Shown here one piece after another: positions 21,836 through 61,724 of a DNA stretch of 64,000 bases. The notes below the pieces were generated by a model. That model was given only the letters and a program-made list of their open reading frames with translations, made no database searches and had not been told where the DNA came from. The stretch is from Pocillopora damicornis. Taxonomy: Eukaryota. Where the stretch lies: positions 124,001-188,000 of the forward strand of contig NW_020845054.1 in NCBI RefSeq assembly GCF_003704095.1. The letters run 5' to 3'. The translations under genes were made by a program, and so were the position numbers. Numbering within the stretch: position 1 is the stretch's first letter; each line of letters begins with the position of its first letter.

Positions 21836-23572
21836 GTATTTAGGACACACTTTAGTAGCCTGGCCATTGTGGCACAGTGGGTGTTGTGATGTTAAAGTAA
21901 ATGTATTGTCACTGCTCTTTACCCCACAACATTACAGACTAGTTTTTGCAGAGACTGTTTGACTGTACTTCAAAGAAACCATAGAATCACTATCCTACCA
22001 GGTTTACTCTAATATGAAACTGCAGCACAGGAATGCAGTGATGTGATTTCATTTTATTGCTACTATTTCATAACTGGGTACATTACATCATGTTAATACC
22101 TTTAGAAGGATTCAACATAGTAGCATATTGAAGAATGTCACAAAATAAAAGTTTCATCTGGTGCTGGAATGCTATTATTTACTACTTTTATTTTCTATTT
22201 TAGCCCTTTACCACCCATTACGATAAACATAAGGGCATCTGGAATAAAGCCCTGAGTAACCCTTGATGAAACATGAACTTCTCCCTGTGTTTCACAAGCG
22301 AATGTAGGACAGGTTGAAAGGAGAATCTAGAGGTGTGTGAGAGGTCACTTAGGGCTTTTTTCAAGCATGCCTTAGATTGTGACAATTTGAATGCCAAATT
22401 AAATTAGAAATGTGTTATTTTGTTACCCACTCAAGCGTCTGGGAAAACATTCATAGCCATATCCGGTCTTCTGTCAATTTAATGCACCATTTAGCAGAGG
22501 ATGCAGAACTAAACCTCAGTCTTTCATTCCTCCTCAAAATAGGATGCCACTACAATGAATTTTAAACATAAATTTGTTTTTCCTTGTTTGAATCATATAC
22601 TTAGCATTGTTAAAGGAGTACACTTTCATTGTTATGTTGTAAACTGATTATTTTCCTTGTTAGTGTTGTTTAGAATGATTATGTTTCTGTGATGTGATTA
22701 TTAGAATTAGCTCATAAAAATATCTGCACTTTGAAGTTTACTATATTAAGCAAGCAAGTAAGCTTGCATTTATGCTGCAGCACTACTGGTAAAGTGGCTA
22801 GAGACCAGCAAGGTGGCAAAGCAGGCTGGAGTGGGATCACAGCTTCACCAATTGGGCCACAGCATTTCAGAAAAAGCCTGCATCAGGACTACACTAAATT
22901 GCAAATAATAACAACAGAAATAAAAATAATTACCACTAATTACCTTATAACCTGATAACATACTTAAAGAGGTTTATTTACAAGGCAGTTAGTTAATATG
23001 TTAATGAGAATAACATAAGCATTTACTTATAAGTTAGTAATTATGTGTTAAATTATATTCCTTAGTACAGCAAATTTATTTACAAACTGCAGAGTGAGTA
23101 TTTCTCTTCTCAATTTTTTCTCCAGGATCACAGACCCTGGAACAAACAAATAATTGCAGAGGAATCTCTGACAATTTTAATTAACATAATTAAATGTTTT
23201 TATAATATATTGACTCCAACATATTTGTTGTACAAATTCATGAGATGTGCTCTGCCACAATTAAGCTGGAGGCAAACCAACTGAAAAATTCAAATCAACC
23301 ATTTAAGTCATTATATGGTATCAAAATAAATTTTTTTTTTATATAAATAATAAAATGAACTTTGTTTTTCCAAAAAATTAGAGTCTCTATAAACCACTAA
23401 TTAAAAACAATCCCCAACTTTACACAAACTAATACCTTGCAAGAAATAAATTAACCACACCCCAAACACACCTAATTTGAACCAAGAAAGACTATTAGTA
23501 ATAGTTGCAATATACTCAGTCACTTGATAAAATAAACTTTTTTGAGTAGGAAAAAAATTTCTCTGTGTAACA

Positions 23573-26500
23573 TTAATCACTGGTTCCATAGAGTGTTAAC
23601 ACCCATTTTGACACTGTGCCTGCATATCCTTTGGCTGAATCAGAGCCTTCATCCTCCTGTTGCAATAAACTATCTAGATCACCCTCGTCTTCAGCGACTG
23701 GGAACACTTGATCACGCATGTAATCTTTTCCAAACCGGCCATGATGTATCTCATCATGATAGCTGTCGTAGTCATCCATGATCTCATCCCGGCGTGCTTT
23801 CAACAGGTCATGTTGTATAAGAACCTTCTCCCTTTCCTCAACATCTGGTTTTGATGGTGCACTTGAAGACTTCTTGTCATGGTGGAATCTTAGGATCCAT
23901 GTTCCTTTAGGGGACTCATCCCAGAAGTGCACAGTCATGAAAGCCCAGTCATTCAGTCCAAATGTGTCCTTGTCATTGCGGCGAACAGAAAGTAACTGAC
24001 TTGTCATTTTTCCTGGGGAGGTGAGATCAATGCTGATATCACCACGGAATGCCTTGGATAATCTGAAGCTGACAGTGACCTGTACGTGCTCTAGTTTCTG
24101 GATGTCACATGCATCTGTGTTGAGGCTCAACTCCAGAGTACCTCGAATTGGAATATACGGATCCTTTATAGGGCCAATTACTGAACAATTCTGCTGTTCC
24201 CCAACTGGCATCCAATTCACTGCTTCACTCACCATTTTGGCAGCATTAAGACGACCAAATCCAAACTTGTGATTCACCAACAAACCTGCTGCATTCTCAA
24301 CCCATCCTTCATCTTTTGGACTGGTCTTCAATGCCGTTTTCACAACAATGTGTTGAAGATCACGCCAGGTCAGATTTTGGTTTGCTTCCAGAACCAAAGC
24401 AAAGATACCTGAAGCCAGTGGAGCAGCTGATGAAGTGCCACGGAACCTTGTGGTGCACTTGTGCTTAAGATCAGTGGTGACTAAGTCAGCTTCACTGGAG
24501 CCACCCCGGTGAGTGTCTCCTGTGTAGGTTACTGCCATTGTAGATGAACACTGTTCATCATAGTAAGTGGAGAGGCCATATCGACTGACGGCTCCAATAG
24601 ATATCGTATAGATACTAGATGTGTAGCCATCTGCATTACAATCATCATCGGCAAGACCTCCATTACCAGTAGCCCAAACAAATATACTTCCTTTCCCTGG
24701 AGAGAAATAATAAACATTTTCAGGTATTCTTATTGTAGTGATGGGGTATTTGAGGATTTCTTCATAGTAAAAACAGGGAAGTGTTTGCACTATCAGACAC
24801 TTGCTTTATAGTGGCAGCCGACTACAAAAACCATTTACACCCTAACATCAGTATGCATATTCTCCATACTGTTCTCTATACATTTCCTAAGGCATGGACA
24901 AGGACAATTTGTTCAACAATCAAGAGCCCCTTTAGTTGGTGATCATTTCCTTTATTCTCATGACCCTAACTTCTGACTCAGTAGTGATATTGCGAAGAGA
25001 AATTAGATGCTTATCAACCTTAGGGCTTAGAGGGTTAAAACCTGAAGACAGTCTCACTTACAACCTTCTCACTCTGGACAGTCCTCAATTTCCAATTGAT
25101 TAGTCACTCTTAATTTATATTATCTTCTGCTGGTTGAAACAGTAAGGAAAGTATCAAAATAAAAAAGGAGGCTTGAAGAAAAAACAAAATGTAGTTTTCC
25201 CATAAGCATTAAATAGATAGACACAGCTGTGTGGAAAGGGAAGTTTTCCATTTTGTGTTTCAAGCTGACATGCTGTCAGATCAGTAAACTTAATTATCAC
25301 TACTTATTTGTGATGGCTTCATTTAAGCTCAGCGGTCAAAAGTTAAGAAAAGCGTTGGCTGAATTTCATTCACTCTAAGACAATGAGCGCTTTATTTAGA
25401 GCTGTGTTGTTTTACCCATTACAAAACAGTAACTAAGAACTAAGGCATTTCTGCCAGCAATGAGCCCTGTGATTTTCAATTCTTTTTCTATCAGTGTATT
25501 TATGTTAACAGTACAAGGGCCTGCAGCTGTTGTGTAAGGAAAATAATTCTTAGAAAACATCTATGGTAAAAACATTTTGCTGTGGTTTTAAAAGCATCAG
25601 CTAACCTTTAAAGTAGAAAACTCTTTAACGAAAAAAAAAGGTTAAAGAACTTCCGACTTCGAATATTGAGCCTCGATACAGGTTCGATAATACAGCAATA
25701 ATGATTCTTAATGATAACCCCTTAATTTTCACTCTCATTTTCAGCGAAGAGCATTGGCAATATCAAAACAATGTCGTTCTTAATTTAATTTGTAATGACA
25801 AACGAAGGTTTCCTTCCTTATTTCCTTTTGTGTACAATAGAAAAGCTGTGAACGATTTTAATGCGAGTGGGAGATCTACGAAATAACATACGTCAAGAGA
25901 ACTTTTAGACACCCACGCATACTTAGTGAACCTCCGGAATATAAAATACGGAATATTAGTAGAAAGAAAAATATAAATCCTTAAATTTTAAGTTAAAAAG
26001 AGAGCCATATGAAAATTATTTCAGAAAATACAGCACAAAATATTCAATCGAAAAAAACCACTCCGATATAATAAATCTAGTTTCTGTGATAATCAAAACA
26101 AAACCTGGCTCACAGGTTTAAATAATTAATGACGATCATGCATTCAACTTTCTGAATACTAAATCTGACACAAGCGATCTAAAGTTGATTTATTTTACAT
26201 GAAAAACATTAACTTGATTTGCCTCGTAAAATCTTTTAAGTAAAATATTTCTCCCGATGGACGTTGACAAGAACTAATGAATCATCTTTATGTAGGAAAA
26301 TTAAGTTTACATGGCTGTTGCCAAATTAGTTTAGCTTACCTCCGCGACCGTACTTAGCTCCATCTTCGAACGCTTGCCTTCCCAACGGTCCTGGCCTGCC
26401 AAAAGTTTTTCCGTCGTCTTTCGGCCCCCAACAATTACTGTAAATATCGATGTAATCACGTCGAAAGCCTAAAGCGCTTGCTTCCAATAAATCTGTTGCC

Positions 26501-27324
26501 GTACCGTCGAGCATTCGAATTCCGCCAAGATTTACGTTAAAAGCTACTCCGACTCCGCATTCGTTGTTATCTTCTTGAGCGCCTACTTCCCCAGCGCATT
26601 TCGTACCGTGCGCGTTATACGGATCGCTGTCGTTCGGAAATGGATCGTCATCATCGTCATTTAGGTCTTTACTTGCGTGTGGATCATAGTTTCTTTTCAA
26701 ATCGGGATGTGTGTGATCTAAACCATCGTCAAGAATGCTGACAACAACCCCTTTACCTGTTATACCGCGACGCCAAACATCGAGTACCCCTATATCAGCT
26801 CCGACTAAATGTTCATCATTTTGACCCCAGTTCACCAAATACCATTGCCTTTCCCATCCAGGATCATTAAATATTCTCTTGTATCGCTGTTCTCGGTATT
26901 TCCTTTCTAATTCTCGTTCTCTTAGGTAACTCTCTGGCAAGAAGTCGCGCTTGTTTCGTTCTAGAACGCGCTGTTGTTCGGCCCATACGATCCTTGGATG
27001 ATCGTTGAGTTGACGAGTTCTCTCTGTCGCTCGTCGCTTCAAACGAGCGCTTGTTCCTTCGTGCATGAACTTGAAAATACGGGGCAAGCTACCAATTCTA
27101 CCATTGTGTTTCAAATTAAAATTTCTCGCTATTTCGTCAGCAAGGTTGGAGTCGTCTTCGTCTAATTCTACCGCCCAGATATTTGTGAACAGAGGCCTAT
27201 CGTCTTCTCGGAGGTCACCGAGATGCTCATAATCTTGAAATTCTTCGATTTCATGCTGAAAGACAGGTAGAATCAAAACTGCTACAAATAGTAGCGACGT
27301 GAAAAGAAGTTTTCTAAGAATCAT
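23573..27324 (-). CDS. Soluble subtilisin/kexin-like proprotein convertase, paralog A; exons 27324-26340 and 24696-23573; P domain with large insertion
   Basis: Signal peptide, prodomain ending RNKR, catalytic Asp (ILDDG), His (HGTKCAGEV), oxyanion Asn (GNGG), Ser (GTSSAAP), P domain (LEHVQV, RGDI, FMTVHFWDESPKG, LYGT). No Cys-rich or TM region. Confidence 0.93.
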
Positions 27325-30300
27325 TGGAAAGGATTCCGCCACGGAGAAAGTTCTCCGTTCCTAACAATCGTAGTAACCACAGTTGAAATTTCGGTTAAAT
27401 ATACTCACTGCGCCCGAAAGGTATCATACAGACTGGCTGTCAATTTTCTCAACACCCTTACGCAAAGCCGAAACAGGAAATAATCCCGGGTAGGACAGCC
27501 GTGGCCTTTTTCCTTTGCAACATATATACAATAATTCGTCAACGTCTAAAAGCTTTTCTCGCAATTGAGCTTAATGTTTGCATTTTTGCTGAGAAAAGTC
27601 GTTGAAATTTCTAAATTTGTCGCACTTATGGGTAATTTGTGCGATATTAAAATTGATGTATTTCAACATCCCCTCCCCTCTTAAATTGTTGGAAGCTACG
27701 CTACATTTCATTGGTTGGCAGGGCGAGAAAAATATTAAGAGCGCGGAAGATTAATCGACAGAATGCAAATAAAGAGACACAGGATTGCTAATCAGCGAGA
27801 AAGTTTTATTTCAAGGCAGACGGGAAGACAGCACTTGAATAAATAAATCTGCAATCGTGTATTTAAAGTTTGAGAAAAAAACAAATAGTGCATTGGTCGG
27901 CGAGAGTTTTTACTCTCGTTACAAAAGTTAGATAAGTTGATCCAGAAAAGCGCCAAGCACTGTCAATTTTATTCAAGAGGAGAAAAAATATATCCTGTTA
28001 CATTCTCCTTCAAATTTGAAAATATATTTCTTTGGTCCCAGCTGTTAAGAAAATTGCGAAATCATCATCAAAGCGAATATGCTGACATAGAAGCAATCTT
28101 CTTCGTGAATTTAAATTTGTTAATTTTCTCTTACCTGAGTTTAAGAAGGGAAAAGGTGTAATTTTACTATTCGAGTAAGAATACTGACAAAATTTTCCAA
28201 TTTCAGTAAAAAAGAAATCTAAAAAGCACAATTTGTGAAGTGTTAGTGGCAGCTGTGTGTTGTTTGTGTTTGTCACTCACAGTCAATGCCCGAGGAAAGC
28301 GAAAATGATAAGAGCTGATCTTTGCGCGACGCGAGTGAAGATGGCGATAAATAGAAACGGAAAACAAAAACTTCGAGAAAAGGTGCTCCTTTTCAACCGA
28401 ACTGATAAAAAAAGTCGCGTATTCAATAATTAGGAAGGAACTTTCATGTTTATACGAGACATGAATTGAAGCTATCGTGAGTAGGAAGTCAGGTTAATTT
28501 AAAAAACATCAATGGTCTTCTTTTTCATGTAAAACAGAGGAGGTACGAAACAAAGCGGTAATGTCATCCCACACTATATTAATTTTCAAATTGATTTCGA
28601 AAATCGTCGCACGTTAGTGGAAAAAGGGCGAATTGAGGACTGCGTTCAAACTGTTAAAAACCAGTTTCAGATTAATGAAGGAACTTTAGTCTCTTTACGA
28701 GTGTAAATCAAGTTTTTTTACGATGCTAGATGATGCGTGTAAGCCGAAATAATGGAGTCAGCTGGTGCCCGCTTCAACGGCATGATTTATGATAATACAT
28801 TTTTCTTGATGCTAGAGTTGTCGCCGAATCTGATAAAAGTCTCAAACTGAACAGGAGTAAGCCACGTAGTTAAAAAGATGAAAACAAACCTGAGCCTACA
28901 GCAAAGTAAAGCAGTTTCCAAAGTTGGGTGACTCGTCTCTTCCGAGAAGCTAAATCTACCAATATTTTGCCACGGTGAACCGACTTACTTTTCTCCTCAT
29001 TCAGCCACAGAATGTTTAGTGATAAGAAAACCAAATTGTCACTATTTTAAGCTTTTTTCAAGAGGGGTTTATAATGGAATATATAGCTGACAACAACAGA
29101 AACTAATTGAAAAAATATATCTTACGAGAAGAAAAATGATATTGTTATATCTTTGGACTATCCTGCCTCACCAACATCCCCTCTCCATTTAGATCAAACT
29201 TGTAATATATAAAGCTAGCCTTGAATTAAGGCATATTTTTGTTCTAAACCGTTTCTTGACTTTCAAGTACACGAGTGGAGTTCCTCGAGGCTTCAACGGA
29301 TAAATCCAGAAAATTGAAATGGAAGACTGAGATCACTGAGCTTTAGAAAACCATTGACGTGTAAGGAAATGCTCTGTTATCTACAAGCCCCACGTCGCTG
29401 TCGTGTCGTGTACATTTCCGAAAATTAGGTAAAAAAAAAATTTAGATAAATTTTGAGTGAGAAACTCGAAATAATCGAAAAATTTTAACATGGAGTAGAA
29501 TTGGCAAATAGAGGCATTCGAAACGTAAAGGCCACTGAATTCTACGTACATCCTGTGATTTTGCGACATGTCTGCCTTGTCACGTTTGCCACTGTGGTCA
29601 TGTGTGCATCCGTGGTATTTTTGCTGAGATGGAGAAGGTCGAAAAGCAACAGTATTTACCGTGGACAATTTAGTTTCCTTTCTCAGCGCACACAAATCAT
29701 TGTGACACATTTAGCCAGGAAATCAATCACTTCAAACTATCTATCAATCAACCACAGCTGAGCACTGAAGCAAAACAAAACCGTGAATCTTTCTCTTCGG
29801 GTAGGCCTCTTTTTCTGGTAGACGAAGTTCAGAGAAATTTGGCTTCAATAGCCGAAGTACTAACTCTACTAATTGACGAACTAACGGTTTCTTCCCTGAA
29901 TTAACTTCAAAATGATTGCTATTCGGCTTCTTGAAGGGCAAAATAGATCAATATGCGCGCTATATTCGAAGTTTAAACGATTCTCTTTATACTGAGAATT
30001 AAAAAGCGTTTCATAAAATTTTAAAGAGACCCCTTAACCCTCCATCTGGATCTGTCAGTGTATGAATGATATTCAGATCACAGAACCCAAATAAAGCCCG
30101 TACGTCCAGGTGACCGGCAGAAGGTTCAGCTTCATGAAAAGAGTTTTCCTCGAGCAAGGCTTGAAGAAATTATAAGCTTCGAAGAAAAGATTTTGTCCAA
30201 AAACAAATACGGGAAAGGTCATTAAACTTTCTGGAAATTTTACGTATTCCACAATGCAAAATTTGGGACTTGACGCGAATGAAATCTCGTTGACATATCT

Positions 30301-32046: not shown

Positions 32047-35000
32047 TCAGGCGGTACCATACATAACAAGAGACCAATTTCTAACGCACCCAGCTATATG
32101 CCCTTGAAGTGACTTTGAATGTGAACACATTGACGACTCGTCAGAAGCTACATTAATGGGTTGTCTTGGTCCTTTTACTGACTTCATATAATCTTCCTTA
32201 AACCGTCCATGAGTAAGCTCGCGCTGGAAACTGGGTTGGTCTTCGCTCCGCTGAGGAAACTTTTCGTGACGTTTTTCATACGATCGCTTTGACAGCTTCA
32301 TGTAATCTTCCTTAAAGCGACCATGGGAAAGATCATTTGCGATGCTCGGTTCGTCTCTGGATTCTCCTTCGTCAAAAAATCTGTCGTGGCGTCTTGGAGA
32401 GTAGTCGTCTTCAGACTGAAAAAAAAACAAAAGATAACAATTTGTAACGTAATTCTTTGTATATATGTATTTGAAACTAAATGTCAAAGGTTATTCAAAG
32501 TTAGAGTTAATTTTTTGGAATTGTCTTTTTACCGAAATATATAAGCAACTTGTTCGTCGTACGTAATAATCTGAAAATTTATGAGGCGCTAACAAGCTCG
32601 TAATCCCACGTAAGAAAACTTCAAACTTTGGCTTAAAATCTACACCTTTTATTGGTTCCAAAGTGTGGAATTCCTTACCAGATGAATCACGCTCAACGAT
32701 AATTCTTAAGGTATTTAAGAATGCTGTAAGAGAGCTACATTTGTAATGCACGGTCTTCTGAGATTTCTCCCTCTGTTATAATTTTAAGAGTTAGAATTGT
32801 TCATTTAATAAAAGTAGTTAGAAAATTAGTTATTAACTGATTATTTTCGATATCCTGAATTGTTGTTTTTTTGGTTATTTTCTTATACTTTTCACGGTAT
32901 ATTAGCATGTGCTGCTTGGGGCCTTAATCAGCCTCATCAACCTGAGTCGAAATAAAGTTACTTACTTACTAAGTTTTCCTCCTCTTAGCAAAATCGCGCC
33001 GCCCTTTCAACCAATCAGATGTAGATCTAAAACCAATATTGTGGCTTAGTCACACATGTTTTCATCCAAAAATATACCATTTTATTACCTTCTCATCTCG
33101 GATTTTCACGGTCCACTCGCCTCGAGGGTTCTCGTCCCAGAATTCCACAGTCATGAAAGGCCAGTATGCTAATCGTGTTCCGTCGTCTCCTGGCCTCTTG
33201 GCCAGCAGTCGCGAAGTGGTGCCGCTGGGCGAGATGAGATCGATCACCAGGTCCCCCCGGCGACGGTGGTCTATTGATACGTTGAACTGAACGTGTTCTA
33301 GTTTTCCGATGTCTTCGTTGTCATTGATGAGCTATTTGTGATCAGAGATGATGAGGTTAGGGCATGGAAATGAGAAGCGACTTGGAATTGATCGATCAAT
33401 TCAGTAAACAACATTTTTACCTTCAGTTCCACCTCTCCCTTGGATGGTAAAGTTGCTGTGTCAGGTGTCAACAGTCCGCGGAGTGTGTATTTCAGCTGAG
33501 TACCGACATGTTCCCATTCCTTTCCTGCATTAATTAAATCTTCCGCATTTAATACACCAAACCCATAGGAACGACTGTATTTATGCCCAGCACCATTCTG
33601 CAAGACAACAAAAGACAGGAAGTGAGCAGGTTCTGAGGTTTAACTGCTGAGACTATTAAATAACAAGAACGGATCTATTCATCTGCGCTGGAAGGAAACG
33701 GGAAAACTGTTACAATTCAGTGTTGTTCGAGTCTTCCTTACTGAGACACTGCCTTAGGATAACTGAAAGATGATTTACCGTGCTCCATGAAGGGCTGTCA
33801 GGCTCATTTTTCCGCGCAGTTTGAACAACCAAGTGTTGCATATCTCGCCAAGTGAGCTCAGGATTTGCCTCCAAAACCAGCGCAAAGATTCCAGCTGCTA
33901 AGGGAGCCGCACAGGATGTCCCAGAAAACGATGTCACACACTTGTGAAACAGAGAAGTAGTTACAAGATGGCTGTAGGACTCTCGCTTACTGCACTGCAA
34001 ACCAACATCCCCGGTGAAGACCACGCCCATGGTTGAGGGGCAGCTCTCGTCGTAAAACGTTTTGCATCCACTGGCGCTCACAGAGGCGATAGACAGAGTG
34101 TAGATACTTGACGTATAACCGTCGCAGCTACAATCATCGTAACTGGCTCCACCATTGCCAGTGGCCCAGATATACAAAACTCCCTTCCCTTGAAAAAAAA
34201 AAGAACATATTTCTATAAGTGTTTTTTTTTTCTTTTCTGCTATGAGATTATAAACTGTTCATAATCTCTTGGTTTTTGCATATTCAAAGACAACGTGGCT
34301 AAGAGATCAATGAACAGGTCCCCGGATGGAAAGGTCCCGATCGGAGATCTAGTCCGGCTCATCATCTCTTTTCCTTGGACAAGACACTTTATTTACACAT
34401 TGCCTCAGTTTCCACCGTATCTAGTCGACCTGATCGCCTGTTCGCCTGTATCATCCAATTACAGCTTAGCATAACAGTTCCTGAGGTGACGCATATCTAG
34501 CAGAACTTATCGCCTGAAGAGTGAAGAAGACTCACAGTATGTAGTGCATTCGAAACGTCTCGATCCTCTTCGGAAGGGATTGCATAATAATAATAACTTT
34601 TTTAATCTCCTCAAAGAGGCTTTTCAGCTTAATTTACAATGTCAAATATCTAAAACTTAGTTTTCCAAAAATACCCCTAAAAATGCTGTTTTAAACTCAT
34701 CTGGGAGACTATTCCACAGCTTTTGGCCTCTGAAAGGAAATGCGCGCTGACCTGCAGCCGTCCTACAGAGTGGTAAATGTAGGCGGTCCCTATTCCTAGT
34801 GTTGCAGTTGTGCATTTCCTATCTGGTTTTAAACTTCTGACAAAGATATGGAGGTGCAAGTCCATTTAAGCAAGTTGCTTCATAATTGGCAGCCACTGTA
34901 ACTGCTTAAGAATAGGTGTAACATGATCAAATTTCCTCGTTCCAGAAACTATCCGGGCTGCAAAGTTTATCGTGAGACATCATAGCAAGTTATTTGCCAA

Positions 35001-38000
35001 GATGACTAACCGCAACCATTTTGCTTTATAATATATATAATAACCTTCACTTGACGCGAAAATAGGCACGGGTATTTGTCCGTGGACATCATCTGTTCCG
35101 AAATGAGAACAGGTTTCCGAGGGGGAAGCATCGAGGAAAACCGTCAGCTACGAAAGTGCTACGAAGGTGCAACCGTGAACCAACGAGAAGTTTTTTACCC
35201 ATCAGGGTGTTCGTAGTATCCGGCTTAGTTATTTTATGAAAACTAATATCTGTTGGTTCTTCCACCATGCTACTGGTAATTTCAAACATCACTTTTGTGG
35301 TAATTTTCATGCATAGAACAAATTGATACAAATTTAAGGCAATAGCATTTAAAGTTTTGTTTGTCTTCAATTTACAGTCAAGCAGGATATAAAAAAATTG
35401 TCTTTTTTGGTTGATTTTGTCCTTAAAATGAACTCAAACGTCAAGCCTATCCCGCGTCAAACTAGTTCGGAAGCTCAAGCAAAGAGAAAAATGTTCTGTA
35501 CTTAACAACATTTAATTCCATGCCATGCCTGTCCAAGTTTGCGCACGCAGTTCGCAACACAATTGCCAGAACGTTTGCGGGTTCTGAAATCCGACGGGAA
35601 GACCAAAGAAATGGTCGAATCTATTTTGTACTGAGAAGAGCGTTTTTTTCTTAGAAATCGACTTTTTGTGATCGGTAAAAACATAGAAATTATATTTGGC
35701 ATGATAAACTGACGACGTTCATTTTACACTGTGGGATAAATGCATTTGAGACTAAAACATCCACCAGCTGAAATTAAATCTGAGTGAGAAAAAAAAGGAA
35801 AGATCAAAGGTTGAATAGGAGCATTTTCTAGGTTTCAGTTAATATTTTCCGTTCCATAGTAGCCTGGGTAATTTTCTCTTTTATTCTGCTACCTTGAACA
35901 GCAATTTGTGCGTCGAGTACAATTACGGCTGGCGAAATTCAAGTTATTTGGAAAAAGGTGTCAATTTTAGCGTTGTTCTGGGCATAAAAAATCTTTGGAA
36001 AGAATGCTTAGTCATTAAGTGAAAAAAAAACCTGGAAAATTCATATTTTCGTCACGGCGAGGAAACTTTCTGCCCAGCAGAAAACTAAATTTTCCTTTAG
36101 TTCCAAAACCACTTTCTTTTAGTACATTTTGCAAAAAGGTTTGAAAATAATAAAAGATGCTTTCGTTGCAAGACGGTTGATTGAGAAATCGCTTGAGGCA
36201 TCAACAAACTGGAGCCTTAAAAATTTTTGTGGTGATAGCATTTTGCATCGCTGGTTGGCCGTCTTTGATTATTTTGTCTCCTGGCAAAAACAGAGAAACA
36301 GTCTTCGTCAGTCCGTGAATGAAAAAAACAACAAGGACTTCATGTGCACGAACCTCATTTGCAAATACCTTAATTAAACTCCAAAAGTACGATAAGAAAT
36401 AATACAGCTCTCGTCCTTTCGTAGAAAAATACAAAGCGTGGTTGTTTTTGGTGCCGAAAAAAAACGTCAGAGAAAAATACAGAAAGTCGATCACAGAAAG
36501 GAAATTTAAGCAACAGCATTCGTGTCTTTTAGATTTTTGAAATTGAAACTCCAATTACACCAGCTGTTCTTTGTCGGTTTTGAACTAATAAAAAACTTGT
36601 AATAAAATATGTTTTTTGTTCATTGTGGTGTAAGATACTGAGGTCATCTTTGTTCGTTTGTCTTACGATAGAGTCACTTTTGATGTTGATCGCGACGTTT
36701 CGACTGCAGTACTGCTAGTCTTCATCTGGCGTTGTCTCTCTATCGTGAGACAAACGAACAAAGTTCATCTCCAATAAAAAACTTGTTCAAATAAAGCAGT
36801 TCCTTATCCGTCATTTTATAAGGGCTTTGTCTGAAATATTACGCATTAATCTTCTTAAAATCTTTGCCAAATTAAAATAAGGTGACTCCCTTGTTTACAT
36901 GAATTTTTATTCAGCAGTTTCTCTAATTCGTTTGTTATTAGCTGCCAACTCGTTACGGCTCTCGAAATATTAAGCCTTTCAGTTTCCTTGGAATTTTTGC
37001 GTGAACAAAGCGCAAGATAAAAACAGTTTATACGGAAATTTAGATTAGCAAGTAAAATGCATTGTTTCTTAATGTCGCTATTGTCGTGACAACTCAAGGT
37101 CACCGTTTTATACAATACTTACCCATGCACATATTAGTATTTGTCATCAAAGCTCCTGCAATAATTATTCAACCGGTCTCACTTAAATTCAACTCGTGAG
37201 CAAACCCGCGTATCTAATTAAACGCCATCTGTTTCCTGGCTTTAAAAAAACACAGCAAAGAATTATAACACTCGCAGGAAAGATAAACGAACAGTTTCAT
37301 AACTGTTGATCTTTACATCGACTTGAAAATTGAGTAAATGTATACTGACCATCTCTTCCTTCTCGAATGCACTTCTCCATAGCACCGCTTCCAAGTTTCT
37401 CGGGTTTGCCAAATGTTTTTCCGTCATCTTTAGGCCCCCAAGATGCACTAAAAATGTCGATGTAATCGCAGTTGTATCCCAAAGCTTCTGCCTCAATTTG
37501 GTCCGTAATGGTTCCGTCTAGCATTCGTATACCACCAATTTTTGCGTTGAATGCAACTCCTACACCACAAATATTATTATCCGCTTCGGCGGCGACTTCC
37601 CCGGCGCACTTTGTTCCGTGATCGTTGGAAAGATTGCTATCATCTGGCGTTGGATCATGATCGACTCCAACACTAGTTTTATTGTTTACGTCTAAGCTCG
37701 CAGCCTCGTCGTAATTTTTACTCAAGTCGGGGTGAGTATGATCCAACCCGTCGTCAACAATACTCACCACAATTCCTTTACCTGTGTACCCCATTCTCCA
37801 AGCAGACAAAACACCTAGGTTTCCTCTGGTGTCAGCAGCGTCTAACGGACCCATATACCATTGATTTTTCCACTGCGGGTCGTTGAAATATCTGCGATTT
37901 CTCTCGGCGCGTTGCACAAGCATTACCGCTTCATCCCAGGTGTTGAAACCGCGTTTGTGTCTAAATAGTAGAGTTTGTTGTTCAGTCCACTTCACGCGCG

Positions 38001-38271
38001 GGTGATTTAATAGCGGTTGTGTATGATGCTCACTACTTCGTCTCTGGCGGCTCTCCGATCTTTCGTGTACAAACGAGAAATATCCAGGTAAGTTCGCTAT
38101 CGGTCCTGCGTTCTTAAATCCAAGACTTTCCGCTATGCTATGCGCTAATTCTTCATCGTGTGAGTCTAGTTCAACTGCCCAAGTATTTGTGTATATTTCG
38201 CCATCTCTATCACTCTCACAATATCCTGTGCTCAGACTCACTAAAAACACAAACAGTACCACATGCACCAT
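32047..38271 (-). CDS. Soluble subtilisin/kexin-like proprotein convertase, paralog B; exons 38271-37350, 34188-33779, 33597-33421, 33331-33089, 32415-32047; P domain with large insertion
   Basis: Signal peptide, prodomain ending [67 protein letters not shown]. All junctions are GT-AG and in phase. Confidence 0.92.
32500..32971 (+). mobile_element. 3' end of a CR1/L2-clade LINE in convertase B intron 4
   Basis: Decayed ORF2 C-terminus [32 protein letters not shown]...FKNAV, then a 3' UTR ending aataaag-ttacttacttact (tandem tail). Confidence 0.75.
34285..34420 (+). mobile_element. Degenerate tRNA-head/CORE-type SINE fragment
   Basis: gtggctaag head and CORE-like cttggacaagacactttatttacacattgcctc. 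Similar to 46570-46790. Confidence 0.4.
34509..34564 (+). ncRNA. Degenerate minimal type I hammerhead ribozyme-like motif
   Basis: CTGAAGA (34514-34520)...GAAAC-GTC (34552-34559), with atcg/cgat as potential stem I. Stem II is poorly paired. Confidence 0.3.
34585..34968 (-). mobile_element. 3' end of an L2/Crack-type LINE in convertase B intron 1
   Basis: Minus-strand translation [27 protein letters not shown]...LNGLAPPYL...[11 protein letters not shown]...[17 protein letters not shown], then a ctgaaaagcc...ggag 3' end and a (TAT)n tail. Confidence 0.8.
36587..36786 (-). mobile_element. Small element between 14-bp direct repeats, with 26-bp inverted arms enclosing a hammerhead-like core (Penelope/retrozyme-like)
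   Basis: aataaaaaacttgt at 36587-36600 and 36773-36786. Arms at 36648-36673 and 36738-36763. Minus strand reads cgc-CAGATGA-A-GAC...GTC-GAAAC-GTC-gcg. Confidence 0.6.
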
Positions 38272-41200
38272 GGTACAGTCGTGTTTCTTCCACTCCGAAA
38301 CGATTGTCAACCTTCTTCGAAGGGCTGAAGGCTTTTGATCCGATAGTTGACTTATCGCGAAAGGCAGTGGAGTGTTAATAACTATTCAAAATGTTTAAAT
38401 GATTCAATGCTCATTTGCAAGGCTAAATCAACCGCCGTCCAATCAAGTATGATGCACGTAAAAAGGGTAACATGAACTTGTGGACCATGAAGGGTGACGT
38501 ACGACGAAACAGGAACTTAAAAAGTAAATGTTTTCTTTCTCACGTTCCATGCCTCGAGTGCTGTTTTAAGCCTTACTAGACACAAATTCCTCACTGAGAT
38601 ACCCATGGGAACGAAACAGTGGTAATTTATTCCGTGGACACTTTCGTAACCCCTAAGAAAAAACAAATAAATAAATTCTGCTATCTAGAGGTTTGTTTAG
38701 GAACCTGCCCACGTACGACTTCATAATGGGGAAGGGGGTATATGTTTTATCATAGATATTGAATATCCATTTTCACTGTTACCTTAATTATTCCACCCCC
38801 AATCTTGTTGAATCTAAATCTCTCTGGCCATGTGTAATAGCGCAGAAATATCTGTTACTGAATTGGCAGCTTTCCTTTCCAGTTAACGCTAGGAAACTAT
38901 CAAATGTTTTCGCACCTTCCTGCGCGCACTATCAATAAAAATTTTTGCTTCCCTCGACTCATCTTTTCCATTCTTAACATCGTCAAGTTAAACAGGTGTT
39001 CTACTGGTCATTAACACGAGAATTGCTTTGATGAACTTTTATGCTCTCATCCTAAGTTATATGCGCATCTGAATCAAACCACGCTTAGAGTTTCATAAGA
39101 TTCTGCATTCTAGTGAAAAAGATAGTTCTTTGGTTTCAATGGTTGGGTTCTCGGTGACTAAAATTTGTCGTAGGAGTGTAAATGGTGCAAAAGTTAACGA
39201 GAGCTAACTAGACAAAAATCATGTGATACTATTTTTTTTTTTAAAAACGAACAAATATTATTCTGCGTTAAATTTTTAGATAAATAACATAAGCAGTGTT
39301 CAGTGTCAAACGAAGTTAAATCACAGAATTACGACCCCATTTTATCGCGTCTGTCACGACTTTAGAAGTATAAAAAGGTTTTTATATACAAAATTCATGA
39401 CTCTACTAAGTGAACTTAAAAAAGCCATTCCCTTTCCTGCCCGAAACTGTTTGGTAAATAATGTCATACATGTGTGTCTTTAACAGTCTCTTAAAAGAGG
39501 ATCTTTTAAAAATTTGGGAAGCATTGCTTCTGAGGCGAATTTATGTGATACGTGTTAGAAAACTGAAGACAGAGGCTAAGATAACTCATGCGATGGTGCC
39601 TCCGGGTTGACTAATCACTTTATACTCGCGTTTGGGCAGATATTTTCAAACACTAAAACCTGAACCATTAAAACAGTAGAGTGAACACAGAAAGTGTTGA
39701 GTAAAGAACATTTAATAACCGGTAAAGTCAAACTTTTTTCTTTGTTAAAAACGTTACCAGTTGTTCTCGCAACAGAAGCTTACTTGCCGCGGGAAAACAA
39801 TAGATTACGACCTAATTGGTTGGCTTAGAGAGCTGCGTGTTTGGCGAATGACGCGGCCGCCTACGGAAAATGCTTGATCAAACAAACGTCTTTGTGGAGG
39901 GGAAGTTTTTCAGTTTCAGTAAAAATTAGTTTGAGATAAGAAATGGCGGGAAAAGCCCCCACGCCATGCTGCCAGCTGATCGCTCTCGCGCAAATTAATT
40001 CAACTTCACAGCTTCCGTCATCCTCTATAGAGCAAAGAGTCTTTTTTTGGAAATTTAAATTTTCAAAACTAAAACAAGAACAAGGAACAAGAACAAGGAA
40101 AATGTCATACAAGATGCGACACTGAGAACTAAACACCTCGGCAAGCCTCGTGGGTTCGTATCTATATTTAACTTGAGCGTGTTTAAAAAAATTTGCCTTG
40201 AAGTCTAGTTTTAATTCGTCTTTAATTTCCTTTTTTAAAAAGTGATCTCAATTTGAACGCAAGAAGGTCTAAAGCGGAGATGAAAATCCGACACAAATTT
40301 CCAATTTGCTGATGTTTTTTCCTTTTTGACCAGTTCAAGGTTCGTAGCTAAGCAAATAATTATAATAATAATAAAAAATAAAATTATCATTTAAAAAAAA
40401 ATAATTAAAATCGCATTTATTTGGTGCGTTGGGTTATTCTACTAAATTTTTAGCAAATAGGAGAAAAATTGAAATAACAATCCTTAATTTTAGCGGCAAT
40501 TTGATGCGTTTCGCTGAAGACTTCAAAGGCTAACGCATTTCTCATATAAGTTGTTAAGACCATATGTTGTTTTTTGTATTTCCTCTCTCGATTTATGACA
40601 AACTATCGATCCCAAAGGAGAAAAGAGAATCAAAATGTTTTGAAAATAGGGACACGTGTTTGTGTTTATCAGGTCGTCGGGTGAATGTTGCAGGAATAGG
40701 AATAAGATAAATGCTGTCCCATGATATATATACATGCAAAACCCAATATCTTACCACAAACGTGTAGTACTCTTTATCAAAGCAGTATAAAAAATAATCA
40801 AAATCAAATGAAAGTTTCAAGGTGACATTTGGAAGCCACAGTTACTTCTTGATTATTATACATCATATTTACACGATCTAAATCGCTCGTCATTTAACGT
40901 AGCATGTCCCCCAACCTCCCTTGAATAAAAATTTCTCCGAAGCGACTGAGAAAGATGTTGAACCATTGAATTCCGTCGATTAAAGGAACTCTGAGTTTCT
41001 TTTTCACCAGAATTTAGAAAATCACACTTTTGGTTATTGTAAATCGAGTGAGCTCAAGACGTTGAAAATGTTTGAACAAAATTAATATCAACAACAACGA
41101 CGGAGAAAGCAACTACAAGATTTGAAGCATGCCTTGTCAATGGTCTCTCCAGACAAACCTTATCACCCAGGCTTATAGTTTCCCGAATAGACACCGTTTC

Positions 41201-41490: not shown

Positions 41491-44400
41491 CTAGAAGACG
41501 AAACGATTGAAAGGGGTTGTAAATCCTGGCCCGCCTCCACAGCTCCCTGGGGGACCCTTGCTAGGGTCATCATCGTCGTCGTCAGGGGGCTGATGGAAGT
41601 TTGACCAAGCTTTTCGCTTAGCAGTGTTCATGGCTTGACGCTCTCGCTCCTGTAAAAAAGAAAAAAAAGATACAAAATCCTTATGACGAGTTTGTCCATC
41701 GCTGACTCGAAAATTTGTTTGCACTGTTTCTGGGCATTGTTTGGAAGACACGGTGGCTTAAGACTGGTTTTCATTAGCCACGAAGTTGAAGAAGTTAGAT
41801 AACGCAAGAGCATATCCGGCCTCGAGAAAATCGAAACCGGAGTTGTAAACAGAACAATATAAGTTTGAAGGTATTGGAGTCGGAAGAATCAGTACGGTTC
41901 TATTTCATTCCAATTCCGCTTAAGACCCAGTCGCATATGATCCAGTGAAGACGAGATTGTCGAAGTCGCAAGTAAAAGCAAAAGATCCAACCAATCACGA
42001 TGCGAGTTGTCAGGCCAACCGATGGCTTTTGACTCCTTCAATTTCGTCCGCAGAGTCACAAGCAGTATCGGTACTCTGCTTCTAAATCAGCTGGTTTGAT
42101 TTGCACCGGATCGTATCGCTCTACGCTTCTGACAACGACTCCGAGGCTGACGTTAATAAAACCAGCCTTAATTCACGAACCAGGGCAAGAGCCAACGCGC
42201 ATGTACGTGAATTGCCCCTCGCGTGTCTCGATCTTGCCTTCGACTCCAACGTTAGTAAAAAAACTAGCCTCAATACACCGCGCACTGTACTCCGGACCGA
42301 GAGGCGCGATTCACAAACGAGGGCAGGGGCAGATGCGTGCACGTGTGAATAGCCCCGCCTGCTTGCCTTCAAATCGTTAAAAATTGCGCCTGATCTGCAC
42401 GCAAATAAAGTTTGAAGTCAAACAAGTTAGATTGACTCACCTGCAAGTATAAGAGGTTATCGCGATTGACCATGTCCGCCAGCTCCTGCCTGATCTCACC
42501 GCCAACCAAATTATCTTGCACAGAATCACCACTGTTTTCTACGGGAATGACTGCAGCACGAAAAGAGCTGACTCGTTTATAGATCAACACATACGGAGTA
42601 TCCTTAGGGAAACGCTTCGATACATCAGCAAACGAACTGAACGCCGAGTAAGACACGCGACTGTCATTAAACAGATACCACGTGTCTTGATCATCGGTTC
42701 TAGAACTTGAACTCTTGTCGCTTTCTCCTCCGATCAAATGCACGCTAGATCGTGCATAGCAGTAATAATGTCCACTCTCCGATGACGTCCCGGAGTGAAC
42801 GATAACCGAACACAGCGCGTAAACAATATCTGCTGTGAATGTTTCCTCGCTTAAAGACAACGAATTATCGCTGCTAGAGCTGTCAACGACATTGTCATGC
42901 TCTTGCTTTGTCCTTTTAGACTTGAAACAAGAGTGGCTGACGATTTCATCGTTCTTACTGTCATTAACATCTGGGACGCTGTTTCTCGCCTCTCTTTCTA
43001 TCTTATCATCACCTCCTTTGAGGTGAATTCGCGGTAATCTTAAAACTGTAGGATAAGACACACTTTGTAGTATCTTCGACCTTTGTTGGGTCTTCACATT
43101 GTAAGCGAACCTCTTCAGAGTCAACACGAGGAATTCTGAGGCCTTGGAAATGCTAACGGTACGTTCAGCATCCTGTAAACTGTGACAATGCTCGCAATGA
43201 TATTGATTAGATCCTTCAAGAATTTCAGGTTCAAAAAAGTACTTCAACATCTCTGTTAGTGATATGTGTGGAGCATCAGCTCGAACGCCAGGCTCGCGAA
43301 ATTTCGACGAAACACTCGAACCAGCTGAAAAAGGCATTGAGCTCTCTGCTGAGGTCGAACTGTGTGATGAACTTGGAGCCACAGCGTCGCTATCTTCAAC
43401 TGACTTTTGCGCTAAGCCGGTGGCAGACACATTGTGAGTAATATCACCACCTTTCAGACTTCTATCGGAGCTCACAGTTGAATTCACAGGTTTTTCGTCA
43501 TGTTCGATCGGTTGTTTATCATCTGACGTCAGTCCATCGAGCTGCTCGGAGAACATCCTTCTCTCTAACTCACCAGCCTGTGGAAAAGCCAGTGGTAGGT
43601 CTGTGAACACTTCCTCTCTGCAAGAAGTGTTATTACACCTCCTACAGCACAGGCACACCGTCAGCTTTCCAGTAAAGGTCTCTTCTACGAGCGAGGTCCT
43701 TGGCGACCCTTCGTCGTTGCTGTTGTTTTGTGATTTTTCCTCCTCGCTAAGTCTGTCAAGAAGAAACTTGAGAAATTCTGAGCAGTCTTGCTGGGTCCCC
43801 TGTGCAAACCACGGAGGTCTCGCTACATGAAGGAACTTCGACGGGGCAAAGGCAGATCTCTGTAAAAATAAAAATAAAACAAAACAAAACAAGAACAAGG
43901 ATTGCGTCAAATTAATATTCTGTCCAAATTCATTAAAATAATCGGGACCGCCATGGAGCCAATCCAGAACTCTTCAACCAGAGTCTAGCACGTTATTATC
44001 TTGGCTCGATTTGAGTTGGTTTTGAGTTTCTTGACTCGATTTGGTTGATTTTCCAGTTCTCCTTTGGGCCTTAAATCCTCGCGAGAAAGAAAGAAACAAT
44101 AAAACAACAACAACAAACATAAAACTAATGACTTTAAATATATGAAAAATCACTATGCAGTTCACATATATAGCATATATGCGAACTGCGGATAAAGAAA
44201 TGCTACTTAAGCAGTAGCGAACATAAAGAAAAAAAACCTGAAAAATTGCTTCTCTATTAGTGTTCATTACTGCGAAGATCGTTTCCATGTTCAAACCCTT
44301 ACAAAGGATAATCCTCCAACTAAATTCTAGTATTTTACTACAAGCACATGTTGCGGGAGATTTTACCTGTGTTAGAGAGAGGAAGGCAAACACTTGTTGC

Positions 44401-48635: not shown

Positions 48636-50238
48636 GATGGCGCAAAAAACAAGTTTAAAAATAGCATTTGTTGATGAACCTTCGTCGTTTTAATTTTAGT
48701 TCTAACTACATACCCGGATGTAACGCGGTCAAGAGGTCTGGGAGTGCAACACAAAGTCACCAGCTTGTCCCCCAGTGTACCCTAGTCGGGATTGGGGACA
48801 TTGGGGCGATTGACATTAATTAATTGTTTTTTGTTTCTGTATGCATATGCTTTCTTCTAGAGAACATCAGCTGATTTTGGTTATCTGCTCTCATTGCCTT
48901 TAAAAGACCTTTAAAATCATTACGGTCATCAGTGTTTTTAACGAAATACCCACTGTGTCTTTCTCAACAGACGGCGCTTACACAGTTTTATCGTTTTTTC
49001 CCGTCGGGATGTAGCTAATGTCTCGAATTAAAGATCTTCCGACATCTCGCAAATAGGTCAATATCAGCGAAGCCTAATTAATCTTAAGTTACCTCTCCCA
49101 AAAGTATCGTATTTCTCAGAAAAAAAGATAAGCATGCAATTCCGAAAAATAACTCTGATTTATTGCGAAAATTTTGCACCAATCTTAAAATAAACTCTTT
49201 ATTTGTAAAAATATATCCATTGAACTTCATATGTACAGAGAATCTAAAGATAAACTGAACTTGTTTAAGAACAATATCTTCCTCTTCATATGGTCATTTA
49301 AAATTGCAAATATCGGATTAGAACTATTCTGATTGAATGCTTTTCCCCATTTTCTGTGATATCCACTTCATTTCCGACTATCAAATGTGGCGCCAGAAAA
49401 TCGGGCTCAATGAAGTCTTTGCTGATAAAATAAGTACTCAGATCAAAGCATCTGAAGAGCTCTTTAAAATCACCCTCATAATTATCTTTTATGTACACTT
49501 CTCGAAGCTTCAACGATTCGATGTTCTTAGACGCGGGAAAATTCATCAGGGATTTGTTTTCCTTTCAAGAAAACAAAACAGATTTAGGACACCCTCGTGT
49601 TTTGAATAAAAGCCCAGGTTTCAGAGTGAATAGTTTAGGACAATATTTACAAATCAACACCCTTAAACCTATTTGTGTACATCGCTTGCAAGAGCTTTGT
49701 GGTCTTTTGTATAAGCAAGGTCGCAACTAATTAACCAATCGCATTTCTAGTTTTAAAATTAACTTTTCAATCATGACGCTTCCACGGTGTCCGATTCCTA
49801 TTATCCCATGATTGTTAACAAACCCCCAAGAAGAACAAGAGCATGTAAAACTTGTCTTATGGCACCCCTCGTGGTATTCTCGAGCTAAAAATATTTGCCA
49901 CGACAGCGTTAATTAGCTAGCAAAGAAGCAAGTTTGTTCATTTTGAACTGACTTAGCGAAGGCAAACAGCGATTATCCGTGGAGAACATGCCTGGGGCCA
50001 ATATCTGGCGCACTGGGGCAGAACAGTAAATGACAACTTATCAAGAACACGTCAAATTTTCATACAATATAAATCGATATCAGTTCCCAGGGGACCCGGT
50101 TCGAGCAAAAAAAAACCGTGGAACTAAATGGAATTTTGGACGTTGACAATGTCTTCTGGCTTTACTCTACTTTTGAAACATGTTTAACATTCTTTGACAA
50201 GTAGTGTTGTTTTGAGGGACGAGAACGAGAAGCGAATC

Positions 50239-61648: not shown

Positions 61649-61724
61649 GATAAACAGTTCCAAACGTCGCACAACCAAGCAAAAGTGAAATAGTGTTCGA
61701 ATATGTCTGCATAAAATGGAAGTT

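What the first reader, a model, noticed from the sequence alone, without database searches (positions are those of the whole stretch)
23621..23884. Proprotein convertase carrying a neuropeptide-like cassette (HGRF-G-K, RFamide-type) inside its P domain
Seen: between the strand GTWILRF and the last strand GTVSKWVLTLYGT, paralog A has ~88 residues. The loop contains ARR-DEIMDDYDSYHDEIHHGRF-G-K-DYMR, i.e. a dibasic site, an acidic spacer, GRF, an amidation Gly and a basic residue. Known: furin-type convertases have only ~9 residues here, and cnidarian RFamide precursors have this layout (acidic spacer-QGRF-G-R/K). Inference: the enzyme may carry its own cleavable peptide (an enzyme-precursor fusion), or an internal pseudo-substrate or sorting loop. 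I know of no such description for convertases.
Basis: partly seen in the sequence, partly recalled or inferred. Interest (0 to 1): 0.85.

Follow-up and report, generated by a model that had tools for sequence, protein, structure and literature searches.

The report
Conserved insert in coral convertase P-domain
A coral hormone-processing protease really carries an expressed, strongly conserved 88-residue extra loop in its P domain, but the "RFamide neuropeptide" look is incidental to this species: the conserved element is a longer fixed motif of unknown function, shared by many cnidarian convertases.

Summary
Window 23621-23884 (minus strand) encodes 88 residues between the last two P-domain strands of a two-exon kexin-like convertase; furin has about 8 there. 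PolyA RNA contigs from four studies splice out the one intron and keep the loop.

Across 15 orthologous sequences the 16-residue block HDEIHHGRFGxDYMRD is 96% identical. Its only variable site is the "basic" residue after Gly: K in 5, E in 7, G in 3. The tandem paralog B and its 19 relatives always read HGRFK[E/D/N]DYM, with no Gly. More distant relatives read HGRT. DYM[K/R] after the supposed cleavage point is conserved. A canonical Antho-RFamide precursor, with about 17 QGRFGR copies, lies on another contig of this genome.

What is there is an old cnidarian P-domain insert:
- a predicted helix ending in a conserved KA[R/K]R site;
- the fixed motif in a low-confidence, probably disordered stretch;
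- an acidic tail.

For helix through motif, dN/dS is at most 0.07 wherever dS could be estimated, like the catalytic part. Inserts of 114-280 residues sit at the same site in the published Hydra PC3-like endoprotease, an Acropora homolog and a jellyfish clade.

The function is inferred only: most likely a tethered docking or regulatory motif. A released non-amidated peptide is not excluded.

The parts
26340..27324 (-). Gene A, coding exon 1: signal peptide, S8 pro-domain ending in RNKR, and the first half of the catalytic domain (Asp in DDGLD, His in HGTKCAG)
   Evidence: ORF and Pfam hits; motif positions; RNA contigs join 26339/26340 to 24695/24696; first in-frame ATG at 27324
24697..26339 (-). 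The only intron of gene A (GT..AG, 1643 nt). It holds a highly repeated element at about 24771-25092
   Evidence: Joint seen in all four RNA runs; splice-site context
23573..24696 (-). Gene A, coding exon 2: second half of the catalytic domain (oxyanion Asn in GNGG, Ser in GTSSAAP), the P domain with the insert, and the stop codon at 23573-23575
   Evidence: continuous RNA contigs
23621..23884 (-). The 88-residue insert between the last two P-domain strands (24 Asp/Glu, 12 Lys/Arg, 6 His, 4 Tyr; net charge -12 counting only D/E and K/R)
   Evidence: conserved in orthologs
23768..23842 (-). Predicted alpha-helix of the insert (ORF residues V317-Y341), pLDDT block means 66-86; not amphipathic (hydrophobic moment 0.04)
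   Evidence: AlphaFold2 with a 90-sequence alignment; hydrophobic moment; 78% mean pairwise identity
23789..23800 (-). K-A-R-R, a canonical convertase-type cleavage motif followed by Asp-Glu
   Evidence: KARR or KAKR in all 15 A-clade sequences; cleavage itself not shown
23711..23758 (-).
   Evidence: 96% mean pairwise identity over 13 orthologs; 0-2 non-synonymous against 3-7 synonymous differences per comparison; pLDDT below 50 in the isolated P-domain model
23726..23728 (-). Lys codon (AAA) after the Gly: the only variable position of the motif (K, E or G in orthologs)
23582..23620 (-). Last P-domain strand, GTVSKWVLTLYGT. The protein ends two residues later, so there is no C-terminal tail
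32047..32415 (-). Paralog B, last exon: its own insert plus the last strand. [10 protein letters not shown] occurs twice (32296-32325 and 32182-32211), with no Gly after Phe
   Evidence: a phase-0 intron (32416-33088) sits exactly at the start of the insert
33089..38310 (-). Paralog B, upstream exons (pro-domain, catalytic domain, P-domain core) in at least four pieces
   Evidence: ORFs and Pfam hits; tblastn of gene A exons; sequence reading

Best explanation
Gene A is an intact, transcribed kexin-like proprotein convertase of a stony coral. Its last P-domain loop carries an old, selectively maintained insert. The insert has four parts:
- a variable linker;
- a predicted helix ending in a conserved KA[R/K]R site;
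- an acidic Tyr-rich stretch leading into a fixed linear motif, core H-G-R-[F/T]-x-x-D-Y-[M/I]-[K/R];
- a variable acidic tail that runs back into the last beta-strand.

In this species the two free positions of the motif happen to read G-K, which mimics an RFamide processing signal. That is incidental.

Shown here: the insert is real, expressed and under purifying selection. The motif, not the G-K, is what is conserved. Inserts at the same site occur in other cnidarian convertase clades.

Inferred: the motif works while still attached to the enzyme, as a short docking or regulatory element on a flexible acidic tether. It could bind the enzyme's own body or a conserved partner. It could also be a site of Tyr sulfation or of pH or metal sensing through its His residues. 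These convertases have no C-terminal tail, so the insert may stand in for the regulatory and targeting tails of bilaterian neuroendocrine convertases. Which of these applies is not known.
For: Transcription:
- RNA contigs of four polyA studies keep the loop and remove only the 1643-nt intron.

Enzyme integrity:
- The pro-domain, S8 and P-domain Pfam hits are present, as are RNKR, the Asp/His/Ser residues and the oxyanion Asn.

Placement and structure:
- Furin aligns on both sides of the insert.
- The AlphaFold2 barrel has pLDDT above 90, the helix about 66-86, and the motif region below 50.

Conservation:
- Mean pairwise identity over 13 orthologs is 96% for the motif, 78% for the helix, 74% for the catalytic part, 66% for the P core, 34% for the linker and 47% for the tail.
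- dN for helix through motif is 0.05-0.11, against 0.03-0.06 for the catalytic part and 0.08-0.22 for the P core. dN/dS is 0.03-0.07 where dS could be estimated; dS is saturated in two of the four comparisons.
- The motif core is invariant in paralog B and its 19 relatives, with 2-4 copies each.
- It recurs as HGRT..DY[M/I]R, up to 4 tandem copies, in more distant relatives.

Age and spread:
- Another genome has the same tandem order, a repeat-bearing gene upstream of a single-motif gene.
- Same-site inserts starting with a similar acidic helix occur in Hydra PC3-like variant A (179 residues), Acropora palmata PC3-like (247) and a clade including the jellyfish Sanderia (114-219). All end within a few residues of the last strand, apart from the Acropora sequence, which runs on for 20.
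- On columns that exclude the insert, all 46 long-loop sequences fall on one side of a branch.

Background from the literature:
- Granule sorting of PC1/3, PC2 and CPE uses short helical domains, and paired-basic sites can themselves act as sorting signals (PMC2064127).
Against: - No function was tested.
- The structure test of loop against enzyme body gave no answer.
- The helix of the A clade is not amphipathic (hydrophobic moment 0.04, below about 98% of shuffles). It therefore does not look like the known granule-sorting helices.
- Two to four tandem copies in paralog-B-type genes, each ending in a basic residue, fit a released multi-copy product at least as well as an intramolecular element.
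- The branch uniting all long-loop clades has weak support (SH-aLRT 58).
- The full-length enzyme could not be folded here, so where the motif lies relative to the active site is unknown.
Confidence: 0.6

Rival explanations
1. Enzyme-precursor fusion in altered form. The loop is cut at its conserved basic sites (KA[R/K]R before the acidic stretch, DYM[K/R] after the motif). This releases a conserved, acidic, non-amidated and possibly Tyr-sulfated peptide of about 25 residues, while the nicked P domain stays folded.
For: - KA[R/K]R is present in 15 of 15 A-clade sequences.
- The motif nearly always ends in K or R.
- With that residue as P1, the Arg of HGRF sits at P8. This fits the usual rule for monobasic sites (my knowledge, not tested).
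- There are 2-4 tandem units in B-type genes and in P0010, a layout typical of peptide precursors.
- RKRR-type or KR-type sites recur in most loops of the jellyfish clade.
- The motif region is modelled as disordered and so would be accessible.
Against: - No cleavage data exist.
- B-clade first copies lack an upstream basic site, and some end in T, N or E.
- KARR lies inside the predicted helix.
- Established cnidarian neuropeptides are short, lack acidic residues and are amidated (PMC7523074).
- Cutting a loop inside a folded domain is an unusual way to make a peptide.
Confidence: 0.12
2. One reading: the loop is an RFamide-type neuropeptide cassette (dibasic site, acidic spacer...HHGRF, amidation Gly, basic residue) that yields an amidated ...GRFamide peptide.
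For: - In this species, and in four other database sequences, the string reads GRF-G-K with an upstream KARR/KAKR site.
- The loop is transcribed.
Against: - The basic residue is E or G in 10 of 15 A-clade sequences.
- Gly is absent from all B-clade copies.
- Phe is Thr in other lineages.
- There is no Gln for a pyroglutamate cap, and a lone Lys is not among the processing signals the paper lists for cnidarian precursors (KR, RR or R after Gly; PMC7523074).
- DYM[K/R] downstream is conserved, which a processing signal does not need.
- The genome has a standard precursor with about 17 QGRFGR units elsewhere.
Confidence: 0.03
3. A tolerated, functionless expansion of a surface loop (neutral low-complexity acidic insert).
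For: - The linker and tail evolve fast (34% and 47% identity; dN/dS 0.24-0.73).
- Insert length varies widely between clades, from 88 to about 280 residues.
Against: - Helix and motif are as constrained as the catalytic domain.
- The motif survives duplication into paralogs and tandem repeats, and across distant lineages.
Confidence: 0.04

Closest known systems
Hydra PC3-like endoprotease variants A/B (Chan et al. 1992, PNAS 89:6678; cited in PMC10305222) and the Acropora palmata protein of the same NCBI name
   Same: These are cnidarian soluble kexin-like convertases with a long insert at the same P-domain position. The insert starts with an acidic helix of similar pattern, and the Hydra protein ends 2 residues after the last strand (Acropora 20). 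They group with the window's gene on insert-free columns.
   Different: Their inserts are 179-280 residues and lack the HGR[F/T]xxDYM motif. They form a separate clade from genes A and B. I could not read the 1992 paper, so I do not know how it described this region.
Furin (PDB 1P8J, 4OMC, 6YD3 and others) and Kex2
   Same: Same domain order and catalytic residues. The P domain aligns on both sides of the insert.
   Different: Furin has about 8 residues where gene A has 88. Furin also has a Cys-rich region, a membrane anchor and a cytoplasmic tail after the P domain (my knowledge); gene A ends at the P domain.
Antho-RFamide (pQGRFamide) preprohormone of Hexacorallia (PMC7523074)
   Same: Both contain G-R-F, and this species' copy has a following Gly and acidic flanks.
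   Different: The true precursor has many tandem QGRFGR units with short spacers, about 17 in this genome on another contig. The convertase loop has one unit and no Gln. Its Gly and basic residue are not conserved, and it has a conserved downstream DYM[K/R].
C-terminal regulatory and sorting tails of PC1/3 and PC2, and the convertase site within a helix that sorts VGF (reviewed in PMC2064127)
   Same: A helix plus a paired-basic site attached to a neuroendocrine-type convertase. The insert-bearing cnidarian enzymes have essentially no tail of their own.
   Different: The element is inside the P domain, not after it. The A-clade helix is not amphipathic. There is no sequence similarity, and sorting was not tested.

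Membership tests
Kexin-like proprotein convertase (peptidase S8, subfamily B) | N-terminal S8 pro-domain ending in an R-x-K/R-R autocleavage site | tested here: met
   PF16470 E=3e-19 on exon 1; RNKR followed by Asp
Kexin-like proprotein convertase (peptidase S8, subfamily B) | Subtilase catalytic domain with Asp, His, Ser and an oxyanion Asn | tested here: met
   PF00082 on both exons; [16 protein letters not shown] and GTSSAAP found
Kexin-like proprotein convertase (peptidase S8, subfamily B) | P domain directly after the catalytic domain | tested here: met
   PF01483 E=9e-17, profile positions 2-70 of 86, interrupted by the insert; furin aligns on both sides; confident barrel in the model
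Cnidarian RFamide neuropeptide precursor | Immature unit with an N-terminal protecting Gln, then GRF, then Gly, then R, KR or RR | tested here: not met
   The loop reads HHGRFGK: no Gln and a lone Lys. Rule taken from PMC7523074
Cnidarian RFamide neuropeptide precursor | Amidation Gly and following basic residue conserved in orthologs | tested here: not met
   K in 5, E in 7 and G in 3 A-clade sequences; no Gly in the B clade; Thr in place of Phe elsewhere
Cnidarian RFamide neuropeptide precursor | Multiple tandem copies separated by short spacers, as in the genome's own precursor | tested here: not met
   One copy in gene A. Compare about 17 QGRFGR units on another contig
PC2 (neuroendocrine convertase 2), the label of the Desmophyllum ortholog | Asp instead of Asn at the oxyanion hole (my knowledge of PC2) | tested here: not met
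   GNGG in exon 2. The label 'Neuroendocrine convertase 2' on P0001 is the source's own name
PC2 / PCSK1 / PCSKX orthology groups of metazoan convertases (bioRxiv 10.1101/802215) | Placement in a tree with named reference sequences of each group | not tested
   No named PC1/3, PC2, PC7 or PCSKX references were available. The tree only shows the gene apart from PCSK5/6-like sequences and next to the Hydra PC3-like clade
Granule-sorting helix of neuroendocrine convertases | Charged helix with a segregated hydrophobic face | tested here: not met
   Hydrophobic moment 0.04, below about 98% of shuffles, for gene A. The Hydra and Sanderia helices score higher, at 0.36 and 0.33
Cnidarian long-loop convertases (informal group defined here) | Insert of more than 60 residues before the last P-domain strand, starting with an acidic helix, and essentially no C-terminal tail | tested here: met
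   All 46 long-loop sequences lie on one side of a branch, SH-aLRT 58

The most novel reading that the evidence does not exclude
The convertase is also a peptide precursor, though not for an RFamide. Its P-domain loop would be cut at the conserved basic sites to release a conserved, acidic, non-amidated and possibly tyrosine-sulfated peptide ending in ...HGR[F/T]xxDYM. There would be one copy in A-type genes and two to four in B-type genes, while the nicked enzyme stays active.
Probability: 0.1. Interest if true: 0.85.

Novelty: new variant of a known kind. Interest (0 to 1): 0.45.

Why it matters
[quoted passage not shown] How cnidarian convertases are regulated and targeted is barely studied.

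This work defines a built-in module that bilaterian convertases lack. It sits in a loop that is short in furin and Kex2, and it contains a motif as conserved as the active-site region. I found no description of it in the papers I could search. That gives a concrete, testable handle (loop deletion, motif mutants, peptide pull-downs) on convertase regulation or sorting in early-branching animals. It also suggests that tail-like functions may have moved inside the P domain.

The result also removes a tempting false lead: a GRF-G-K string in one species is not evidence of an RFamide.

Tried and rejected
- Loop as a retained intron: rejected. Four RNA studies keep it and there is no joint inside it.
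- RFamide cassette: rejected on ortholog and paralog comparison.
- Docking of the loop onto the enzyme body: one complex-prediction job with four chains by reference (mature part of exon 1; exon 2 up to the insert; the last 30 residues; a 71-residue loop as the partner). It returned no answer, score 0.00, and my alignments were not used. This is evidence neither for nor against.
- Amphipathic sorting helix: the hydrophobic moment of the A-clade helix is very low, so that analogy is not supported for gene A.
- Other copies of the loop in this genome: only the two paralogs; a third hit at E=1.3 is noise.
- ESM Atlas look-up: generic convertase clusters only.
- Full-length named coral orthologs: none came back within the length limits of the search for homologous proteins.
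- Chan et al. 1992 is not held. Literature searches for a described P-domain insert found nothing.
- First tree labelling: a loose pattern cut the Hydra-clade sequences short and mislabelled them, so the AU test was run on a wrong set and is void. Corrected.
- Left out by rule: the joined exon 1 + exon 2 protein was not searched or folded. The junction frame was only checked in a script. Searches and folds used single exons by reference.
Full report
**1. What is in the window**

The finding's coordinates, 23621-23884, lie on the minus strand inside a 405-codon open frame, 23573-24790. They are 88 in-frame codons between GTWILRF and GTVSKWVLTLYGT.

The gene, here called A, has two coding exons:
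- Exon 1, 26340-27324, carries a signal peptide, an S8 pro-domain ending in RNKR, and the Asp and His of the catalytic triad.
- Exon 2, 23573-24696, carries the oxyanion Asn, the catalytic Ser and the P domain.

The protein stops two residues after the last P-domain strand.

A tandem paralog, B, lies upstream on the same strand at about 32047-38310. It has at least five exons.

**2. Is the loop in the mRNA?**

Yes. Contigs from four independent polyA RNA studies were laid on 23000-27800. Each run's contigs together cover essentially all of exon 2. In X1 a single 2328-nt contig spans 23333-24695 and continues at 26339-27308. All four runs show the same single joint, which skips a 1643-nt GT..AG intron. 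No joint lies inside the loop.

Contigs can hide rare isoforms, so a minor spliced form is not excluded. Three of the four variants checked in scripts (two of them inside the loop) are synonymous. The fourth (23632, in the loop tail) changes Lys to Glu.

**3. Is it an insert in the P domain?**

Yes.
- The Pfam P-domain profile matches positions 2-70 of 86 and then breaks.
- Solved furin chains align to P-domain residues 2-126 and again to 201-223, leaving about 8 furin residues opposite the 88.
- An AlphaFold2 model of the 224-residue P domain, built with a 90-sequence alignment, has mean pLDDT 81. The barrel is above 90 on both sides of the insert. There is a helix over ORF residues 317-341 with pLDDT about 66-86. 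The stretch that holds HGRFGKDYMR is below 50.

**4. Comparison with relatives**

A full-library HMMER search and two word-index searches returned graded orthologs at 48-99% identity, plus more distant relatives. One is from the stony coral Desmophyllum pertusum.

Over 13 orthologs, mean pairwise identity by region is:

| Region | Identity |
|---|---|
| 16-residue block HDEIHHGRFGxDYMRD | 96% |
| Acidic Tyr stretch | 80% |
| Helix | 78% |
| Last strand | 75% |
| Catalytic part | 74% |
| P-domain core | 66% |
| Acidic tail | 47% |
| Linker | 34% |

The only variable site in the block is the residue after Gly. It is K in 5 sequences, E in 7 and G in 3. That is exactly the "basic residue" the RFamide reading needs.

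Codon comparison with three orthologous loci gives dN of 0.05-0.11 for helix through motif. The catalytic part gives 0.03-0.06 and the P core 0.08-0.22. Where dS could be estimated, dN/dS is 0.03-0.07 for helix through motif, 0.04-0.06 for the catalytic part, 0.14-0.20 for the P core and 0.24-0.73 for linker and tail. dS is saturated in some comparisons.

**5. Paralog B and distant relatives**

B's insert sits in its own last exon, behind a phase-0 intron placed exactly at the start of the insert. It holds [10 protein letters not shown] twice. Nineteen relatives of that exon have 2-4 copies, always HGRFK[E/D/N]DYM and never a Gly.

More distant relatives read HGRFKE, HGRFKG, or HGRT followed by GE, SE, RE or VE. 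One has four 25-residue tandem units.

In another genome the repeat-bearing gene sits directly upstream of the single-motif gene, the same order as B and A here. The pair is therefore old.

The common core is H-G-R-[F/T]-x-x-D-Y-[M/I]-[K/R].

**6. The RFamide reading**

The hexacoral neuropeptide survey states that immature cnidarian neuropeptides end in Gly followed by KR, RR or R. It also says they are short and usually lack acidic residues. Immature Antho-RFamide is QGRFGRE (PMC7523074).

This genome has such a precursor on another contig:
- A degenerate pattern found 13 hits in a row and none in the control.
- The translation shows about 17 QGRFGR units with short spacers.

The convertase loop differs on every diagnostic point. 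There is no Gln and only one copy. The Gly is absent from the B clade, and the basic residue after it varies within the A clade. The sequence after the supposed cleavage point is fixed. The RFamide cassette is therefore a species-level coincidence inside a longer conserved motif.

**7. Wider setting**

Long inserts at the same position, beginning with an acidic helix of similar pattern, occur in:

| Protein or clade | Insert length |
|---|---|
| Hydra vulgaris PC3-like endoprotease variant A | 179 residues |
| Acropora palmata protein of the same NCBI name | 247 residues |
| Clade including the jellyfish Sanderia malayensis | 114-219 residues |

These proteins end within a few residues of the last strand; the Acropora sequence runs on for 20. 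Among about 100 other convertase sequences recovered, the loop is mostly under 25 residues.

On a tree from 280 columns that exclude the insert, all 46 long-loop sequences fall on one side of a branch. Support is weak (SH-aLRT 58), so a single origin is compatible but not shown.

The sequences have been public since the 1992 Hydra work. I found no paper that describes the region as a P-domain insert, and I could not read the 1992 paper.

**8. Mechanism**

Shown: the insert is a conserved, expressed module with a helix, a conserved KA[R/K]R site and a fixed motif in a stretch modelled as disordered.

Inferred: the motif is a short linear interaction element. My preferred reading, about 0.6, is that it acts while attached to the enzyme, as a docking or regulatory site. 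Possible forms are:
- binding the enzyme's own body or a conserved partner;
- dependence on Tyr sulfation (the invariant Asp-Tyr and the acidic Tyr stretch fit the usual sulfation context; my knowledge, not tested);
- pH or metal sensing through the His residues.

The idea that it replaces the sorting tails of PC1/3 and PC2 (PMC2064127) is attractive, because these enzymes have no tail. But the A-clade helix is not amphipathic (hydrophobic moment 0.04), so that specific analogy is not supported.

The main rival, about 0.12, is a released non-amidated peptide. It is favoured by the conserved flanking basic residues and by the tandem copies in B-type genes.

The single structure test of loop against enzyme body gave no answer.

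**9. Limits**

- The joined two-exon protein was not searched or folded, by rule. All searches used single exons by reference.
- Most relatives come from unnamed assemblies, so the taxonomic range of the motif beyond stony corals is unknown.
- The assembly size and contig count (234,350,878 bases, 4393 contigs) match my recollection of the published Pocillopora damicornis assembly. This is memory, not a tool result.

**10. Verdict**

The RFamide interpretation is not supported. What remains is a new variant of a known enzyme family: a cnidarian P-domain insert with a strikingly conserved motif of unknown function. Interest is moderate.

Noticed in passing
window 24771-25092 (inside the intron of gene A): A short element with enormous summed depth in all four RNA runs (up to about 67,000) and hundreds of loose ends and odd joints. 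It looks like a highly repeated, widely transcribed interspersed repeat.
   Followed up: no
G000:C3105:177540-178030 (locus L008:1381-1920): The genome's canonical Antho-RFamide precursor: about 17 tandem QGRFGR units with short spacers, mostly acidic. The pattern search gave 13 hits and none for the control.
   Followed up: partly
window 32416-33088: Paralog B has a phase-0 intron exactly at the start of its insert, and another small intron at about 33335-33420 inside the P domain. Gene A has none there. This hints that the insert could have arisen or spread as an exon, or that A lost introns.
   Followed up: partly
locus L007 (20.7 kb of an unnamed ENA assembly): Two tandem convertase genes in the same order as in the window: upstream one with four HGRT..DYMR repeats (P0010), downstream one with helix plus a single motif (P0009). 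The A/B duplication predates the split of these lineages.
   Followed up: partly
window 32050-32160 (paralog B, end of insert) and alignment A7: Two invariant Cys residues (C97 and C110 of the exon) flank the last part of the B-clade insert just before the last strand. They probably form a disulfide, and the A clade lacks them.
   Followed up: no
proteins P0003 and P0020 (database relatives): These two 'proteins' differ from gene A mainly by His to Tyr, Pro to Leu/Phe/Ser and Thr to Ile changes. They look like translations of C-to-T converted (bisulfite-type) reads, not real variants.
   Followed up: no
window 61244-61804, minus strand: A histone H2A open frame ending in SQEY, the H2A.X-type C-terminal motif.
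   Followed up: no
window 6058-7998 (minus), 42369-43910 (minus), 50194-54744 (plus): Neighbouring genes seen only as ORFs: exons like a UDP-glycosyltransferase, an exon like a ubiquitin-specific protease, and a large P-loop plus ankyrin-repeat protein.
   Followed up: no
window 23632: One RNA run (X13) reads C for T, changing Lys to Glu in the variable acidic tail of the insert. The 99%-identical database protein P0163 has the same Glu. The other three variants checked (23753, 23879, 23918) are synonymous.
   Followed up: yes
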